From the NCBI GenBank assembly GCA_904063045.1, contig CAJFCJ010000001.1, positions 2,232,001 through 2,296,000 of the forward strand: a stretch of DNA of 64,000 nt. Reading direction: 5' to 3'. Source of the DNA: Dimorphilus gyrociliatus. Taxonomy: Eukaryota > Animalia > Annelida. The notes beneath the pieces are model-generated. The model had not been told where the DNA came from. It did no database searches and worked only from the letters and a program-made list of their open reading frames with translations. The number at the start of each line of letters is the position of its first letter. The first letter of the stretch is position 1. This document shows, piece after piece, positions 31,160 through 39,800 of this stretch. A program made the translations under genes and the position numbers.

Positions 31160-31490
31160 GCTCTGAGGCGATAATACGTTGATGTAAAAGTAGTGCTAGG
31201 GATATCGTAAAAAATTCGAACACATTTTTTTTACAGCTAACCAAGGTTTGTATTATCTTAAATTCAGTAACATACAGATATAATGGCACAAAGCGTATTT
31301 AAGTTACAAAATTTTCAACATTATTTCACAAAAATTGACAATTGAACTTGTATTAGTTGAAGGGTCACAGCGATAAACTCGAAGAAATAAATATAGCAAA
31401 AATTATACAGCAATAAAAGTAAGCAGTCATTCAAGTGTTTTTTTTACAAGTTATAAAAGACAAAGACAAAAAACAACATTCTTTCTGCAA

Positions 31491-33387
31491 TTATTTACAG
31501 GACTTTTCACTCAATATATCCTTCAACAAATCACAAATAGGTAAATTCGAATCATTTTTTGCCTCGTACAATCGACTAATAGCGTTTTGGGACAGCTGCC
31601 TCACATGAGGCAATAGAGAAAGCAAATTGCTTATTCTCTTTGCAGATCCATCGCCAAACTTTCTCTTTGAATATTCATCCAAAGCGCTAAAAACATCGTC
31701 GTTGATTGTACAATGAGGCAGTTGCTTTATTCGGCCATTTACAAGTATTATAACTTTTAGTAGCACATATTCCTCTTTGGAAATATCTAAATCGAAAGCT
31801 TTCTCCGATAGATCGAATAAATATGGTGTTAAATTTCCACCTACGCCCCCATCTTCACATTTTCGCCTGTCAAATATTAGATCAGTAGCAAATTGCACGT
31901 ACTCCCCAGCATGAACTCTCGATCTCCAAATGCATTCCCATGACAAAAGCTCCATCCAACTGGATTCAAGAAAGCAAATTTGATCTTCTTGTGAAAGTTT
32001 ATCAAATTTTGGTATTAATTTAGCCCAATTAATGTTGTCAAGTAGTACCTTGTTGTACAGCTTTATGAAGACCTCGGTTAGATCATCATTTACATTATCA
32101 GCCCTTCTGTCTGGGGGTTCAATTTTAAGTAAAGTGCCAAGGTAACCAGTTTCTATTGAGATAGGTTCGCAAAATCTAAGACCAGCTTCGAAGCATTTCT
32201 TTAGTTTACAAGCCGAGCACTTTTGAGGACAAGTGCATGTATACCTAACCCGATTTTTGATGGTTTCGTTAAAAAATTCTGAGCATTCGACACAAAATTC
32301 TTTGTCGACTTTGTGCCCTGAACACACTTTACATAAAGTGCCACGTTCTTCCGGCTCCTCGTCATCATCATTCTCTAGAAAGAATTTTACTCCAAACCCT
32401 CCACCCTCTAAAGATTGTCGCCTTAATGAATTTTTATCATCCGCCTTCGCCGTAGCCAAGCTGTCAAGATTACATGGAAGGCTTTTGGCGCCGATTTGCT
32501 CACCTTGGAGAAGTTCTCGTAAGGTTGCAGATGAATTCTTCGGCAGTGAAGAATAAGAATCATAGCCAGAATCCAGAGATCGGGTACTGCTTGACTTTAC
32601 CATAAAATCTTTGTTTTTGATACCTGTTAAGTCGCTTCTCGCCCGTTCAGTGACAATTTCGGCCAACAATTCGAGATTTTCTCCCGACCGCGCCCAATGA
32701 GGTAGCTTAGCCAAATTTGGGACATCATTCGTCAGAAGGGATTCAAGAATAGATTTCTCAGAGTCTGAAAAGAGTTTGCAAAAAGGTTCTAAACTATTGT
32801 TCAATAAATCTATAAAGTTACGATCGGTGGCGCCATCATGCACTTTCTAATAGTATCTGACGGACTGATTGCAAATCCACGCAGTTATTGCAATGTTTAT
32901 CTATAGCATAGTTTAAATAATAGCAGATAAATAACAAACCTCCCGTTATTTATGCCTTTTAAAATGTCTCTTATTTTAACTATGCTTAAGGTTTTCGAGG
33001 AAGATTTCCATAATCGACAATTAATTACTTATCCATCATTTTGTTTAAGTATTGTCTATTTAGTCGAATAAGATTTTGCTTACCGTGTCTGTTTGTAGTG
33101 GAGGGTATAACGGATGCCGTTAAGTACTTTATGAGCTCTGAATCCGATCTACAGTGTTTCAGTCGGCTGTCAACTTCACGTGGAGCTTCTATAGTTGCCT
33201 TACGCTGACTACGCTGCATACTGGGCATTGTGTTCCTTCGAACGCGATGCTCCTCCATATCTCTATCCAGTGACGGGGGAAGTTTAAAAGTCGATGCCAT
33301 GAATGGAGGACAGCTAGAATCCAATTTTGTTCTTTTTACTTGCTCATCTCCCCTCCGTAAGTCATTCGGGCGTTTTACAGTCGACAT
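31491..33387 (-). CDS. Steroid-receptor family (NR3, most ER-like) nuclear receptor with degenerate C4 DNA-binding domain; likely exons 33387-33084 and 32809-31491 (~540 aa)
   Basis: LBD: LLKIEPP, INWAKLIPKFDKLSQEDQICFLESSWMELL...WRS, FATDLIFDR, LLPHVRQLS...LYEAK...PICDLLKDIL. Remnant DBD: CKVC-x9-CVEC...CTC-x3-CSACKLKKCFEAG. The 5' exon junction is uncertain. Confidence 0.85.
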
Positions 33388-33916
33388 TTCTTCTTTATTA
33401 ATCTAATGCTCATCTGAAAATGACACACACATTGTGAAATTCCTATGGTATTTAACAAAAGTAATGGTTATTCATTATTAGTAACGTAGTATTTATAAAG
33501 GTGTCGTTGGTTTGTACCAACTGACCTTGCGGATGTTTGAAGGACTTTCATTAAGTACTGAGCATATCGTAAATGATCGAAACATAAATTATGAACACAC
33601 TTAAGGATAAATTGTCTCTAACATAGTATACGTTTTCAAAAATAGAAACTTACAGAATAAAAGTGGCTAAAATCGGCGATAATATTGAGTTGAATTGGGA
33701 ATGCCTCTCTTTCAACGCCATACTAAGTCATGTGACCAAAACATGGACGAGTCCTTCATTTTTAACCTTTTTATTGTCAGCACGGCGAGAGAAAGGAATT
33801 CAAAAAACAGATTTAAATAGACTATGAACAAGCGTACTCAATAGATAAATAAGTGAATTATTCTTTGCGATATCAAGAGCGAGCCGACACCCCTATCTTG
33901 ATTCGAGTCCTTATAA

Positions 33917-33943
33917 CGCATGCGCGTGTTTCAAAATGGCGGC
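33917..33943 (+). promoter_or_regulatory. NRF1-like CGCATGCGCG and YY1-like AAAATGGCGGC motifs at the DLST start
   Basis: Motifs lie at and just before the DLST ATG (33936). Motif match only. Confidence 0.4.
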
Positions 33944-36549
33944 AACCATACTTTCCTCTTCGAAACAGCTTTCAAAGTTTATTACACTACAAAGTCGAAT
34001 TTGTTGTAGCCAGGTTAAATTTTTCTAAAATTTTCTAAATTCTTATGCGTTTTTTAGTCTTTGTCATAATAGATTAATGTGTTGATGACCGTTTAGGTTT
34101 CAACGTCAATTGCCCTTGATAAAAAGTTCTTACAATTTACTATTAATTATTGAATACTGATCACTGAAAAGAGATAATAATTATCCTTTATTTTTAGATT
34201 CATTTTCTGTCAAGACAGCAAGAGCTAAATAATCTTGGTAAGTTTAAAGAGATATTCATGGCATGGGTATATCATACACATTGATTTATATTTTCACTCT
34301 AAAACCATATTAATATTTAGGTAAGCTGCAATTTTACAGGGTTAAATATATAATAAACAATAAAAATCAATTGATCGGTCAGAAAAAAATTTATTTAGTC
34401 ATATGATTTTTCAAATTTATCAGAAAATAGAATTCTTATAATTTATTTAATAATTTATCTTGTCATGTTAGATTGCATGCTCTATGAATTTTATTATATT
34501 CTTATCAGTAGTCATGACCTGTCCCCTGTACTTTTCAAATGCACTTATAATATATCATTCAAAAAAGTTCTTTTTTTAGAATAAATAACCATTTCAATTT
34601 TTACTTTAAACAGCTCTGAAGAGAGAAAAGCCCAACTTTTCATTGTCTGCACAGAAACTTAGCAGTCATGTGTCAAAAAGATTTTTGAGAACAACGATCA
34701 AACTAGGTACTTTACTCTCCACTTTCTATTAAAAAAAAATAATAAATTATAGCGTATTTTGTTCTTGAGTTCATTCAGTTTTATGTTTATGTTTTTCAGA
34801 TGATCGTAAAACAATAGTATGTCCACCTCTAGCCGAATCAATTTCAGAAGGAGATATTGTGTGGCTTAAAGGTAAAATAAAAGTAAATCTCTCAAATCCA
34901 ATTTGAAGGTCAACTTTTAATGTGTTTTGACAGATGAAGGTGACTTTGTTGGTGTCGATGAGACTATAGCAGAACTAGAAAATGACAAAGTAAGTTAGTT
35001 CAATTTTCTCCGTCTATAAAATATCTGATACTGTTCTAAATTATCTGATAAATAAAGACAGGAATAATACACATGTTTTCAGAGGTTTTGTCCTTAATAA
35101 TGGACATGACCTTGCACCATTTAACGTTTTGTTATTCTGTCTCTTAGCTCTGAATTGTTGCACGTAGTTTCAGAGAAAGAGCAACATTATGTAATAATTT
35201 CACTATAGGCATATAGAATACAACATTGATTTTAATTTTTATAAAAATATCAAAAAAATTAGCCAAATATAAACAATGCAAAATAAAATTGATATAGATT
35301 ACATTTGACATTGAAAGGTTGAAAAATAGGCAAAACATTAGTCTGTAATTTTCTTTTAATTTGCTAGTCAGTTTTGAAGCCACATATTAATTATTCAGTT
35401 TATTTGAATATTTAATAGCATGTTAGAAGCTATCAATGAGAATTCACCCTATTTTTCAGGCAAATATCCCAATTAAGTCACCCTATAATGGATTGCTGCA
35501 AAAGCTTATTGTTGAAAGTGGAGATACGGTATCTCCTGGAGGTGATCTTTGTATAATTGAGGAAGGTGCAGCAGGTGCACCCCCACCTGCCGCAGCAGCA
35601 CCGCCACCGCCACCATCACCTTCATCGCCGAAAGCTACAGAAGAACCTCCAAAGACTTCGTCTATCCCCGACTCTACGCCAATACCGACGACCCCTCCAC
35701 CGGTAATTATGAAATAACCGTGTTAAAATGATAAACATTGAATTCAAATAGGTTCCGCAAGTTCCTAGTCAACCGATATCTTCAAAGCCTGCAGAGAGTG
35801 TCAAAGCTCAAGAAGCTCAGTTTAATGCATTCTCACTCTCAAACGAAAAGAGATCGGAAAAGAAGGTAAAAATGAATCGTATGCGGCTGAAAATTGCCCA
35901 AAGACTAAAGGAAGCTCAGAATACTTGTGCCATGCTGACAACTTTCAATGAAATTGATATGTCAAACATAATATCACTTCGTAAGCAATATCAAGAAGCT
36001 TTTCAGAAGAAGCACGGTTTCAAACTAGGATTTATGTCAGCATTCTTAAAAGCTTCTGCTTACGCCTTGACCGATCAACCTGTAGTGAATGCTGTTATTG
36101 ATGATAATCATATTCTTTACAGAGACTATGTAGATATTTCCGTGGCAGTAGCAACACCTAAGGGCCTTGTTGTGCCTGTTGTTAGAAATGTTGAATCTAT
36201 GTCGTTTGCTGATATAGAAAAGTCACTTGTTGATCTGGGGGAGAAAGCAAAGACAGGCGCTTTAGCTATAGAAGATATGGAAGGTGGAACATTTACAGTT
36301 TCCAATGGCGGGGTCTTTGGTTCAATGTTTGGTACACCAATAATTAATCCTCCTCAATCTGCCATTCTAGGAATGCATGGAGTCTTCCAGAGGCCTGTAG
36401 CCGTTGATGGAAAAGTTGAGATAAGGCCAATGATGTACATTGCCTTAACATACGATCACAGACTCATCGATGGAAGAGAGGGCGTTACATTCTTGAAAAA
36501 GATAAAGAGTGCTGTAGAGGATCCTAGAATGATGTTCTTAGACTTGTAA
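33936..36549 (+). CDS. DLST: Dihydrolipoamide succinyltransferase (E2 of 2-oxoglutarate dehydrogenase), mitochondrial, multi-exon
   Basis: Lipoyl domain [11 protein letters not shown]...ELENDK|ANIPIKSP, Pro/Ala linker, [18 protein letters not shown]...[12 protein letters not shown]...[13 protein letters not shown] (catalytic His). Confidence 0.97.
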
Positions 36550-36800: not shown

Positions 36801-39800
36801 TCAAAAGTAATACGATGGCGTTCCTACGAAGTCGAGTTCGTTGGTTCGATTTACATTTAGACGAGCGACGTCAGGCAACTCTTCACTGTTGCAAGGCGCT
36901 TCGGGAGTTTTGGTTGCTTGGATTGGATTGGATCTTGCAACAACAAACTTGCCCTGAGCAAGTGGAGGCGTTGAAACATTTCGGCTCTTCAAGAGGTCCA
37001 CTGATGAATCTGGTAAACCAAATTCTCTAACAACTCTTAATTCAAATTGTCTAAGACATTCCGCATTTATGAAGTTTGAATGAGCATAATATAGTCTATG
37101 ATTGGCTTCAATCTGTTTTAATCTTTTTTCCATTCTGTTCAAAGTACTCTCGCCCGGTAGGGGCATAGTGTCAGACACAATATCTGGTTTACTAAATGTT
37201 GAATTGGAAGTAACAGAAATACTACTAACGCTCCAGTCGTCTTCGGTCATTTTTTCCTCAAGAACCGCCTGCAATTCGTCAATATAAGGCTGGAAACATC
37301 TAGGATAGCGTCTATACTCTGGATGCTGAATAAGATCAATCCATCCTTTACCCGTACTATAGTTTAATAAATCAACACCTCGGCAACTAGATGGCATTAC
37401 CAATCCCCTCTTGTCGGCCGCCAGAAGAGTTTCCATATCACTTGAAGTAATAAAATTATAGCGAACTAACGATAACAGTTCAGAAATTATAGATTTTAAC
37501 TCGGTGTCATCTAAATCTCGTCGTTTTACACCTTTCTTCGAAACACTATGAGTTGTATGGTTAAGGAGATTCGGTTCTCGTTCCTCTATTCTTTTAATCA
37601 ATTGCTGTTCGCCCCATTTAATTACGGCAGATAGGATTTCGCCCTCGGACGCCTGTAAAGAATATCATATTACACTTGATTTTTCATTTTCCAATGCCAT
37701 AGCAGGCTAAAGAATACTATCGACTAATGGATTATACAAAAAAGACACGATAGAGGAGCATCATAGTCTAAATTCTAGCACAAGAAAAACTTAATACTAG
37801 CATAAATTTAATTGTAACCTGTGTCAAGTCAAAAGGTTATTGACATCGGCAACTAGCCATAAGAAACGATTTAAGAATGATGCAAAGAGTCTTAAAATCT
37901 TAACTTTGGAAGGATTGTAATATCAACCTTAATAGGTTTGTGTTGATTCATCTATTGACAGGGCTTTTTTTACGCATATATCTTTAAGCTATATTTTATG
38001 GAGCGAGATACAAGTTTATATATATTTTTCTATGCAGCTTATACTCTTGTATAGCTATATGTTTATTTATATATATTATACAAAGATTTATAACGTATCA
38101 GTGTCAAATTATGCTCGTCTCTTCTTTCTTATAAGAAAAAATAGATTTCTTATCTATTTTACGAGATTGGTGAAAATACAATCGATAGCAAAAATCTTCC
38201 TTAAAAAAATCAATTTAATGGTTAAGAGTACTTCTTTTTTGGTTAGTCAAACATAAAATCTGTTCCTAAAAACCCTAGGGGATATTGGGAACAAAGGCAT
38301 TATGAGGGTATTGTCCAATAGGCTAGAGCGACAGCCAAACTTGATAAGTTTTTTCTATTTATTTATATTTCTATATTTTCTACCGCTGACGTTTTTCTCT
38401 GCTAAAAAAATCCAAAAATACACGGATACCAAATCTTAAATATTTACAGAAACTATTAGTCTGTTGGATATACCATATATTTATTTTATCGATTTTATTA
38501 AGAATAAATTATTTAGTTACAAATCGATAAATTATGATTTACGTTTACATGTAACGAAATCGTCTCTTGGGTAACAAAGTAAAGTAATTTAGTGTGGCAT
38601 ATATTTTACGCTGTAAAAAGGAATTAGAGCGGAGAAGTAGTGCCATTTTGAAACAGAAAAAAGAATTCGTAAAGAATTATGGTATTAACTCGATTTAAGG
38701 ACCATTTTACTTCTCTCTCTTATTAATTTTCCTGTAGAGGAGAATTTACTCTAAGATTAGCAATCTATTTCTCTTTTTTTTTTTCTGTACTACAAAAAAG
38801 ATAGTTGCAATTGCGAGATACTATCTAACCAACTGAAATTTGAGAGTTTTCATTAATTTCTTTAGACCAATTCAATTAGGTGTATACTATTAGCATTAGA
38901 TGGTATAAAATTGATTCTAAACTGGTGAACTAACTGTTGTTTTTTTTTTAAACTAGCCTACTTGATTAGAGGTTGATGAGAAAATAAAAAAGCTAATTAT
39001 AAAAGTTTTCGAAGCACTCACTTGCAAAAAGTCTGACGTTAAAACACTCTTAACCGTCTCTTCGTCCAAATCCAGCCAAACACCAGACTGAACTAACTGG
39101 GAAAATTCTTCTTGCACAAACACTTCGCACTGCCTTAAAACCCATTTCGATCCGTGCTTCATACGAGCCCAATTAATTATTTCACAGCAAGTCTCCACGT
39201 TCACCGCTTGCCAGATGAGATTCTCGCAATTTTCTGCCATCTTACCAAATTCTATAAATCTAAAATAAACCGAAAAAGAAAGAAAATGTAAATTTAAGAA
39301 ATCGCAAAGCAGTATTTAGAAGAAAATAAAAGAATTTTACATCTCTAGAACTTGTATGTAATTTATTTTAAGTGAAAGTTCAATTAGAAAGAAATGTGGT
39401 GATAGAACGTAAAACAAATAAACGGAGACTTAATTATTTCAGTTAAATAACGCGTTTTCTGTTATTCTTGTTGCTTTATGATTATTTTGTAAATCCGATA
39501 TTATATAAGTAGATAATTTTGTCTACATTATTTGTTAATAAATCGAAAAGCTTAGGTAAAAACTTTCTTTGTAAACTTATATTTGCTATATATTTTTATA
39601 GCATAAAAATAGAATATGTATATATATAACAAGAGTATCTAACCTGGCTATCTGGTACAGGTCAATCGTATGTCGAACATGGGTTGGAAGATTCGATCTT
39701 TCGGAATTTGCTAAAGCATTAGCGTCGGCTAAAGAAGACTGAGGGATGTTCGGAATGAGTGTGGTATCAAGAATGTCCGTATAAATTGCATGAAGAATAG

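What the first reader, a model, noticed from the sequence alone, without database searches (positions are those of the whole stretch)
31491..33387. Estrogen-receptor-like nuclear receptor with a collapsed DNA-binding domain, LxxLL motifs and a phosphodegron
Seen in sequence: an NR3-type LBD closest to ER (LLKIEPP; INWAK; SWMELL...IWRS; LPHVRQLS...LY..K...P.CDLL). The DBD (32333-32181) keeps all Cys but is eroded. Finger 1 loop is 9 aa instead of 13. P-box CEGCKAFFKRSI has become CVECSEFFNETI, with basic recognition residues turned neutral or acidic. Finger 2 C-x5-C-x9-CxxC has shrunk to C-x1-C-x3-CxxC, deleting the D-box. The hinge is almost absent. By visual alignment, ERalpha E353 and H524 are replaced (V, R) while R394 and clamp K362 are kept; AF-2 reads LLKDIL. 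The N-terminus has LESLL (32747-32733), LRELL (32522-32508) and a beta-TrCP-type DSGYDS (32573-32556). Inference: a receptor that no longer binds EREs and acts as a DNA-independent, degradation-controlled coregulator or decoy, converging on the DAX1/SHP (NR0B) strategy but from the steroid-receptor branch. Annelid ERs are known to be estrogen-responsive and mollusc ERs constitutive, so this would be a third outcome.
Basis: partly seen in the sequence, partly recalled or inferred. Interest (0 to 1): 0.85.

Follow-up and report, generated by a model that had tools for sequence, protein, structure and literature searches.

The report
Estrogen-receptor duplicate with a shrunken zinc finger
A tiny marine worm (Dimorphilus gyrociliatus) keeps a normal estrogen receptor and also an expressed, conserved second copy whose DNA-gripping zinc fingers are shortened and have lost their DNA-reading residues, so it probably works by binding other proteins, not DNA.

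Summary
The gene is real. Public RNA contigs show it spliced as 33387-33084 + 32764-31494, minus strand, encoding 525 aa.

An ortholog at about 78% protein identity has saturated synonymous sites but few amino-acid changes (omega about 0.06; zinc module about 0.13).

The LBD lies inside the invertebrate estrogen-receptor clade. AU tests reject an ERR affinity (p 0.011) and a position outside ER+NR3C (p 0.020).

The zinc module has spacing C2C-9-C2C-15-C1C-3-C2C, against 13/15/5/9 in 89 of 95 relatives. The recognition-helix E, K, K and R, near-invariant elsewhere, read V, S, N and E. The hinge is 20 residues against 39-157.

The genome is Dimorphilus gyrociliatus. It also carries a canonical ER (DgyrCDS613), very probably on the same scaffold. 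So this is an extra paralogue, not a "third outcome" of the annelid ER.

DNA-independent action as a co-regulator or decoy, and degron-controlled turnover, are plausible but untested. The module is remodelled under constraint, not eroding.

Earlier notes of this scan record other odd nuclear receptors in this genome, but not this gene.

Verdict: a new variant of a known kind, of moderate interest.

The parts
33654..34275 (-). Upstream non-coding 5' exon. Its 3' end at 33654 is mapped; its 5' limit is only approximate.
   Evidence: The RNA contig of run X11 carries 622 nt upstream of the joint at 33413. The first 30 of those map to 33654-33683, followed by a GTAAGT donor. Whether all 622 nt are contiguous was not checked.
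33084..33413 (-). Exon holding the start codon: ATG at 33387, 101 codons plus 1 nt.
   Evidence: Acceptor TTTTCAG|ATG at 33413 and donor CACG|GTAAGC at 33084. RNA contigs of X11 and X2 cover it.
33325..33375 (-). Bipartite NLS-like motif KRPNDLRRGDEQVKRTK (residues 5-21).
   Evidence: Translation. Conserved as KRHNDVHRGDEQVKRTK in the ortholog. The motif reading is inference.
32765..33083 (-). Intron, 319 nt, phase 1, GT..AG.
   Evidence: Joint 33084|32764 in contigs of two runs, X11 (depth 868) and X2. The same splice sites occur in the ortholog L001.
31236..32764 (-). Last exon: N-terminal domain, zinc module, LBD, stop at 31491-31493, and 3' UTR to about 31236.
   Evidence: X11 contig piece 31236-32764; ORF.
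32733..32747 (-). LxxLL box 1, LESLL (residues 108-112), in a predicted helix.
   Evidence: Invariant in the ortholog.
32556..32573 (-). DSGYDS (residues 166-171), which fits the DSG-hydrophobic-x-S beta-TrCP degron consensus, in a Ser-rich block of about 50 invariant residues.
   Evidence: The degron reading is inference.
32508..32522 (-). LxxLL box 2, LRELL (residues 183-187), in a predicted helix.
32346..32375 (-). Acidic tract ENDDDEEPEE just before the zinc module.
32169..32333 (-). Shortened double zinc module: C246-x2-C-x9-C-x2-C-x15-C-x1-C-x3-C-x2-C-x4-C.
   Evidence: Alignments; spacing survey; lost recognition residues. AF2 model pLDDT about 72-80, aligned to NR DBDs at Z 7-8.3, rmsd about 2 A. 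Omega about 0.13.
31494..32153 (-). ER-type ligand-binding domain (residues 306-525), preceded by a 20-residue hinge.
   Evidence: Pfam, PDB, AF2 pLDDT above 90 with TM 0.89 to oyster ER, tree.
31512..31532 (-). AF-2 helix DLLKDIL. The charge-clamp Glu is Asp and Met543 is Ile, as in the canonical D. gyrociliatus ER.

Best explanation
Identity (shown). This is an expressed, selectively maintained extra copy of the protostome estrogen receptor (NR3A, also called NR3D) in the annelid Dimorphilus gyrociliatus. A relative carries it too.

The zinc module (shown and inferred). It keeps an ER-type ligand-binding domain, but its DNA-binding domain has been rebuilt into a shorter eight-cysteine module. 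That module lacks the Glu, Lys, Lys and Arg that read the response element. It also lacks the dimerisation (D-box) loop and the basic hinge extension. It therefore most likely cannot bind estrogen response elements in the canonical way.

Estradiol (inferred). It most likely does not bind estradiol in the canonical way either: E353V, H524R and a bulky Tyr at the A350 position.

Mechanism (inferred). The protein enters the nucleus through an N-terminal bipartite NLS. It then acts through protein contacts. These could be LBD dimerisation with the canonical ER or another receptor, its two conserved N-terminal LxxLL helices, or both. In that way it would modulate or blunt receptor signalling. Its abundance may be set through the conserved DSGYDS phosphodegron.
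For: - Gene model and expression: spliced contigs from two RNA-type runs, plus a roughly 95%-identical variant in a marine metatranscriptome.
- Selection against the ortholog: pN 0.148 against pS 0.734, omega about 0.06 overall and about 0.13 in the zinc module. Residues 102-200 are almost invariant.
- Selection, unsaturated comparison: the marine variant shows 25 synonymous against 11 non-synonymous changed codons.
- ER origin, similarity: the seven best DBD-bearing hits of an exhaustive search all carry the ER P-box. Source names confirm them as ER; the best is Owenia fusiformis ER.
- ER origin, tree: the gene sits inside the invertebrate ER clade, in a starred 6-row clade with the D. gyrociliatus ER. 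AU tests reject ERR (p 0.011) and a position outside ER+NR3C (p 0.020).
- E542D and M543I are shared almost only with the species' own ER.
- Loss of canonical DNA reading: the recognition-helix positions E (43/44 in A2; 45/46 in A1), K (44/44), K (43/44) and R (44/44) of the relatives read V/L, S/T, N and E in both orthologs. The loops are 4 and 10 residues shorter, and the hinge is 20 residues against a median of 62.
- Pocket: E353V, A350Y, H524R. H524 hydrogen-bonds the 17beta-OH of estradiol (PMC3886901).
- Motifs are conserved and rarer than chance.
Against: - No functional datum exists. DNA binding, zinc binding, dimerisation, LxxLL and degron function are all untested.
- The zinc module is under constraint and keeps a positive net charge (+4 and +2 in the two orthologs). 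It could therefore still bind nucleic acid in a new way.
- L372Q, unique among 50 relatives, and E542D alter the protein's own AF-2 groove. Its co-regulator partners are unclear, and it may be neither a classical activator nor a classical repressor.
- The AF2 models lean on an alignment of canonical receptors and are not independent evidence.
- Only two orthologs and one near-identical variant were found.
Confidence: 0.5

Rival explanations
1. It is still a DNA-binding transcription factor. The shortened zinc module would be a neofunctionalised DBD with a new, non-ERE specificity, or a monomeric or low-specificity binding mode, and the protein would regulate its own target genes directly.
For: The module is conserved: omega about 0.13, with all Cys, the FF pair, Tyr and the KLKKC helix kept. 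The predicted two-helix NR-DBD core is retained at Z 7-8.3. Net charge is still positive.
Against: All four base-contacting positions of the recognition helix became neutral or acidic in both orthologs. The finger-2 Arg and Lys phosphate contacts and the basic C-terminal extension are deleted. An acidic tract abuts the module.
Confidence: 0.2
2. It is a tethered, constitutively active co-activator-like receptor, not a repressor or decoy. The filled or altered pocket would lock the LBD in the active state, as in mollusc ER or ERR, and the protein would be recruited to chromatin by partners.
For: The best structural match is the constitutively active oyster ER LBD (TM 0.89, rmsd 1.7). A bulky Tyr sits at the A350 position; from my own knowledge, ERRalpha carries a Phe there that fills the pocket. 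H524 is replaced. The mollusc precedent for constitutive activity through pocket changes is PMC3886901.
Against: The AF-2 groove carries L372Q and E542D, which argues against strong classical co-activator binding. AF2 tends to return active-like conformations regardless.
Confidence: 0.2
3. It is a classical estrogen-activated receptor like other annelid ERs.
For: ER-clade LBD. R394, K362 and the overall fold are kept.
Against: E353V, H524R and A350Y in the pocket. No ERE-reading residues. A canonical ER exists in the same genome.
Confidence: 0.03
4. It is a decaying retro-copy or pseudogene of the ER, transcribed by accident.
For: The stretch from zinc module to LBD has no intron, while the canonical ER has at least three in the same span. 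That fits an origin by retroposition.
Against: The 525-codon frame is open in two species whose synonymous sites are saturated, with omega about 0.06. The mRNA is spliced and deeply covered. The upstream 266-aa and 225-aa ORFs recur in matching order and orientation next to the ortholog. A retro-origin is compatible with the best explanation; decay is not.
Confidence: 0.02

Closest known systems
Protostome estrogen receptors (NR3A, or 'NR3D'), e.g. Owenia fusiformis ER, Crassostrea gigas ER (PDB 4n1y), and the canonical D. gyrociliatus ER DgyrCDS613
   Same: LBD sequence (up to 39% identity), fold and phylogenetic position. The AF-2 sequence xDIL is shared with the species' own ER.
   Different: - The zinc module is 14 residues shorter and lacks the ER P-box.
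- The hinge is 20 residues.
- E353V, A350Y, H524R and L372Q.
- The N-terminal domain is unrelated.
- There is no intron from the DBD to the LBD.
NR0B receptors DAX1 and SHP
   Same: Working analogy only. These are LBD-bearing receptors without a functional DBD. They act on other nuclear receptors through LxxLL-type boxes and dimerisation (my own knowledge of the family).
   Different: This gene is not an NR0B member: it nests within the ER clade. It keeps a folded Cys8 module. Its LxxLL boxes lie in a new N-terminal domain. No repression has been shown.
Amphioxus ER (BfER), a duplicate steroid receptor turned competitive repressor by degenerative mutation (PMC2527136)
   Same: One of two steroid-receptor paralogues loses one molecular function, and could thereby come to regulate the other.
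   Different: BfER lost hormone activation but keeps ERE binding and competes on DNA. Here the DNA-reading surface is what is lost, so any interference would have to go through dimerisation or co-factors.
Mollusc ERs and ERRs (constitutive receptors with occluded pockets)
   Same: Ligand-contact positions are replaced, including 524.
   Different: Those receptors keep canonical DBDs and bind ERE or ERRE.

Membership tests
Nuclear receptor superfamily | Ligand-binding domain (Pfam PF00104) with the canonical helical sandwich | tested here: met
   PF00104 at E 5e-16, 59 bits against a cut-off of 23.5. AF2 LBD pLDDT above 90; TM 0.89 to 4n1y.
Nuclear receptor superfamily | C4-type double zinc finger (Pfam PF00105) with spacing C2C-13-C2C-15-C5C-9-C2C | tested here: not met
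   PF00105 scores 12.3 bits against a cut-off of 21.1. Spacing is 9/15/1/3 against 13/15/5/9 in 89 of 95 relatives. Homology of the remnant is clear: eight liganding Cys, FF, Tyr and Gly all align.
Estrogen receptor (NR3A / protostome NR3D) | LBD groups with ERs in a phylogeny, not with ERR, NR3C or other subfamilies | tested here: met
   Inside the invertebrate ER clade. The ER+NR3C clade has support 98/94; a 6-row clade with the D. gyrociliatus ER has 98/92. AU rejects query+ERR (p 0.011) and the query outside ER+NR3C (p 0.020).
Estrogen receptor (NR3A / protostome NR3D) | ER P-box CEGCKAFFKRS and ERE recognition residues | tested here: not met
   The query reads CVECSEFFNET (CLECTEFFNET in the ortholog). 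E, K, K and R, near-invariant in relatives, are replaced.
Estrogen receptor (NR3A / protostome NR3D) | Estradiol-anchoring triad E353 / R394 / H524 | tested here: not met
   V / R / R in both orthologs, and A350 is Tyr. Ligand binding itself cannot be tested with these tools.
NR0B (DAX1/SHP) | Orthology to the NR0B clade and complete absence of an NR zinc-finger DBD | tested here: not met
   The gene nests in the ER clade and retains a homologous zinc module. No NR0B sequences were placed in the tree, so exclusion rests on the ER placement.
NR-box (LxxLL) co-regulators | Helical LxxLL motif that docks into an AF-2 groove | tested here: inconclusive
   Two conserved LxxLL boxes lie in predicted helices, with chance P about 0.04. 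Docking cannot be tested here.
beta-TrCP (Slimb) substrates | DSG-hydrophobic-x-S phosphodegron, phosphorylated and bound by the F-box protein | tested here: inconclusive
   DSGYDS is present, conserved and Ser-flanked, with chance P about 0.012. Phosphorylation and binding cannot be tested here.

The most novel reading that the evidence does not exclude
A steroid-receptor-branch gene has converged on the DAX1/SHP way of working. It would be an ER-derived, DNA-blind receptor that uses N-terminal LxxLL boxes and ER-type dimerisation to hold the animal's canonical ER, or other receptors, in check. A beta-TrCP phosphodegron would time its removal. Its miniaturised Cys8 module would have been re-purposed as a protein- or RNA-binding surface. 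That would be a natural 'Id-like' inhibitor for nuclear receptors in a protostome.
Probability: 0.3. Interest if true: 0.75.

Novelty: new variant of a known kind. Interest (0 to 1): 0.58.

Why it matters
The DBD is the most conserved part of nuclear receptors. A shortened zinc module, stripped of its DNA-reading residues and yet held under strong purifying selection, is unusual. Its 9/15/1/3 spacing occurred in no other of the 95 relatives surveyed.

If it works by protein contacts, it would be an independent origin, from the ER lineage, of the DBD-less inhibitory receptor logic known from vertebrate NR0B. It would also be a second natural example, after amphioxus BfER, of a steroid-receptor duplicate made into a regulator by losing a function.

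It also matters for reading annelid estrogen signalling and endocrine-disruption assays, because this worm has two ER-type genes, not one. The case is testable with ordinary assays in a small, culturable annelid.

Tried and rejected
Searches that found nothing beyond the gene itself:
- Word-indexed protein searches with the whole protein, the LBD and the N-terminus found only the gene's own model and one ortholog. The exhaustive representative search was needed to reach the ERs.
- Two metagenome scans for further orthologs were blank.
- The N-terminal domain (residues 1-245) has no detectable relative by BLAST against the collected receptors, by Pfam, or by ESM-Atlas features.
- No ERE-like palindrome with up to 2 mismatches occurs anywhere in the window.

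Questions left open:
- Dating the duplication failed. The tree makes the gene sister to the D. gyrociliatus ER (96/48), but the alternative is not rejected (p-AU 0.39). Both branches are long.
- The organisms behind the Logan and ENA contigs of the ortholog and of the nearest environmental ERs could not be named.
- The window's position on the scaffold relative to the canonical ER could not be obtained.

Readings rejected:
- ERR origin, by the AU test.
- Pseudogene, by selection and expression.
- 'Third outcome of the annelid ER', because a canonical ER coexists.

Full report
**What is there**

The minus strand between 31491 and 32843 holds a 450-codon ORF. Pfam recognises a nuclear-receptor LBD at E 5e-16. 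The C4 zinc-finger model reaches only 12.3 bits against a cut-off of 21.1. The best solved-structure relatives are estrogen-receptor LBDs: oyster ER 4n1y at 3.5e-24, then ERbeta and ERalpha.

Contigs of public runs laid on the region show a spliced transcript. A 2481-nt contig of run X11 (library kind not on record; depth 868) covers 31236-32764. It jumps to 33084-33413 and continues into a further 5' exon. A contig of the RNA run X2 shows the same 33084|32764 joint.

The skipped 319 nt begin with GT and end with AG on the minus strand. The upstream exon ends at 33654 with a GTAAGT donor.

The coding sequence is therefore 33387-33084 + 32764-31494, which is 525 residues. The 370-aa database model, which starts at Met156 of the 525-residue protein (Met81 of the 450-codon ORF), is N-terminally short.

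Alignment with 44-50 canonical receptors shows three shortenings. The finger-1 loop is 4 residues shorter. Finger 2 is 10 residues shorter, C-x1-C-x3-C-x2-C instead of C-x5-C-x9-C-x2-C. The stretch between the conserved Gly after finger 2 and the Glu of the helix-1 EPP motif is 20 residues, against 39-157 with a median of 62.

Of 95 DBD-bearing relatives collected, 89 have spacing 13/15/5/9. Only this gene and its ortholog have 9/15/1/3.

In the recognition helix, four positions are near-invariant in relatives: Glu (43/44 in A2; 45/46 in A1), Lys (44/44), Lys (43/44) and Arg (44/44). Here they read Val/Leu, Ser/Thr, Asn and Glu in the two orthologs. From established knowledge of ER DBD-ERE complexes, these are the base-contacting residues.

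LBD sites were mapped through a vertebrate ER whose anchor distances match human ERalpha numbering. The result is E353V, A350Y and H524R, with R394 and K362 kept.

An unbiased scan looked for positions where the gene departs from a consensus of at least 85% among relatives. In the LBD it finds only L372Q, L378F/I, E542D and M543I. By my own knowledge of ERalpha, L372, E542 and M543 line the AF-2 co-activator groove. I could not place L378.

**Organism and the second ER**

Cluster names identify one hit family as DgyrCDS613/614/615 of Dimorphilus gyrociliatus. These lie on a contig of 3,609,319 bp, the same length reported for the contig of this gene's own model.

DgyrCDS613 (P0154, 448 aa) is a canonical ER. 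It has the CEGCKAFFKRS P-box, normal finger spacing, a 61-residue hinge and at least four coding exons. It is not in this window.

So the worm has a normal ER plus this gene.

**Phylogeny**

An exhaustive profile-free search of 1.84 billion representatives found 461 relatives. The seven best DBD-bearing hits all carry the ER P-box, and ERR-type hits follow. Source names confirm the P-box labels: ER of Owenia, Ptychodera, bivalves, Priapulus, Lingula and vertebrates, and ERR of a crinoid and of Ptychodera.

I built an LBD tree of 64 rows with LG+C20+F+G4:
- The gene and its ortholog fall inside the invertebrate ER clade.
- They sit in a starred six-row clade (98/92) with the D. gyrociliatus ER and three unnamed environmental ER-like sequences.
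- They are sister to the D. gyrociliatus ER at 96/48.

AU tests reject grouping with ERR (p 0.011). They also reject exclusion from the ER+NR3C clade (p 0.020). They do not reject a tree in which the gene is not sister to the species' own ER (p 0.39). The date of the duplication is therefore open.

The shared, otherwise very rare Asp542 and Ile543 speak for a dinophilid-lineage duplication.

In current nomenclature protostome ERs are also called NR3D (PMC7827873; PMC5375646).

**Selection**

An ortholog lies in Logan assemblies of three runs (L001-L003; 528 aa after the same splicing). Upstream of it lie ORFs of 266 and 225 aa, in the order and orientation that match the window's 36801-37601 and 35872-36549. 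I did not align these ORFs with each other.

Synonymous sites between the two are saturated (pS 0.73), while pN is 0.15. That gives omega of about 0.06 overall, about 0.13 for the zinc module and about 0.07 for the LBD. Residues 102-200 are almost invariant.

A variant about 5% divergent, from a marine metatranscriptome, gives an unsaturated comparison. Among the listed differences, 25 changed codons are synonymous and 11 are not. Only the best-supported 40 of 76 differences were listed.

The gene is neither silent nor neutral.

**Structure predictions**

AF2 on the exon-2 protein, with a 52-row alignment, gives pLDDT above 90 for the LBD and about 80 for the zinc module. It predicts helices over both LxxLL boxes.

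The LBD matches oyster ER at TM 0.89 and rmsd 1.7 A.

The zinc module alone has pLDDT 72 and two helices. It aligns to NR DBDs at Z 7-8.3, rmsd about 2 A over 60-67 residues.

These models depend on alignments of canonical receptors. They show compatibility with the fold, not proof of it.

**N-terminal domain**

It has no detectable relatives. It carries these features:
- A conserved bipartite NLS-like motif at residues 5-21. This could replace the lost hinge NLS (inference).
- Two conserved LxxLL boxes, with shuffle P about 0.04.
- A DSGYDS motif in a Ser-rich invariant block, with shuffle P about 0.012.
- An acidic tract just before the zinc module.

**Origin**

The canonical ER has introns between the two fingers, at the hinge-LBD border and inside the LBD. 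This gene has none from the zinc module to the stop codon, in either species. That fits an old retro-copy that acquired new 5' exons, though intron loss is not excluded (inference).

**How it most likely works**

Shown: ER ancestry, expression, constraint, loss of the canonical DNA-reading residues and of two of the three estradiol anchors, and coexistence with a canonical ER.

Inferred: the protein does not bind EREs or estradiol. It acts in the nucleus through protein contacts as a modulator of the canonical ER or of other receptors, with DSGYDS-dependent turnover.

The constraint on the Cys8 module means it does something. Protein or RNA binding, or a new DNA-binding mode, remain open. The altered AF-2 groove (L372Q, E542D) makes its own co-regulator use uncertain.

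The nearest mechanistic precedents are vertebrate NR0B receptors and the amphioxus BfER repressor. NR0B is a working analogy, not membership. In BfER the lost function is hormone activation, not DNA binding (PMC2527136).

Annelid ERs tested so far are estrogen-activated and mollusc ERs are constitutive (PMC3886901). This gene adds a paralogue with a different loss, not a third state of the single ER.

**Verdict**

This is a new variant of a known kind, of moderate interest. The decisive experiments are simple.

Noticed in passing
L004:3001-7336 (P0154, DgyrCDS613; scaffold CAJFCJ010000001.1 about 2.35 Mb): The canonical D. gyrociliatus ER itself has Gln at the E353 position and Lys at the R394 position while keeping His524. 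Ptychodera ER shows the same Gln/Lys pair. Its estrogen response may therefore also differ from the annelid ERs that have been tested.
   Followed up: partly
window 31491-32843 against 33387: The database gene model for this locus (P0001, 370 aa, starting at Met81 of the 450-codon ORF, which is Met156 of the 525-aa protein) is N-terminally truncated. RNA contigs support a 525-aa product that includes an upstream coding exon and a 5' UTR of about 650 nt.
   Followed up: yes
window 32861-33105: A separate low-depth X11 contig (depth 49 against 868) lies inside the 319-nt intron and across the donor. This suggests a minor intron-retaining or unspliced fraction.
   Followed up: no
window 35872-36549 (+) and 36801-37601 (-); L001:965-2715: Two upstream ORFs of 225 aa and 266 aa recur at the same sizes, in matching order and orientation, next to the ortholog in L001. 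The 225-aa one in L001 is a 2-oxoacid dehydrogenase acyltransferase. This looks like conserved microsynteny around the gene, but the ORFs were not aligned with each other.
   Followed up: partly
window 1-64000: No ERE-like palindrome (AGGTCAnnnTGACCT, up to 2 mismatches) occurs anywhere in the window, against 1.4 expected by chance.
   Followed up: yes
other pieces of the same genome (earlier notes s1-084143, s1-082696, s1-080174): Earlier notes report arrays of diverged nuclear receptors with intronless DBD-to-LBD exons, and another receptor with a broken second finger, in this genome. The gene here may be part of a wider pattern of nuclear-receptor turnover in D. gyrociliatus.
   Followed up: no
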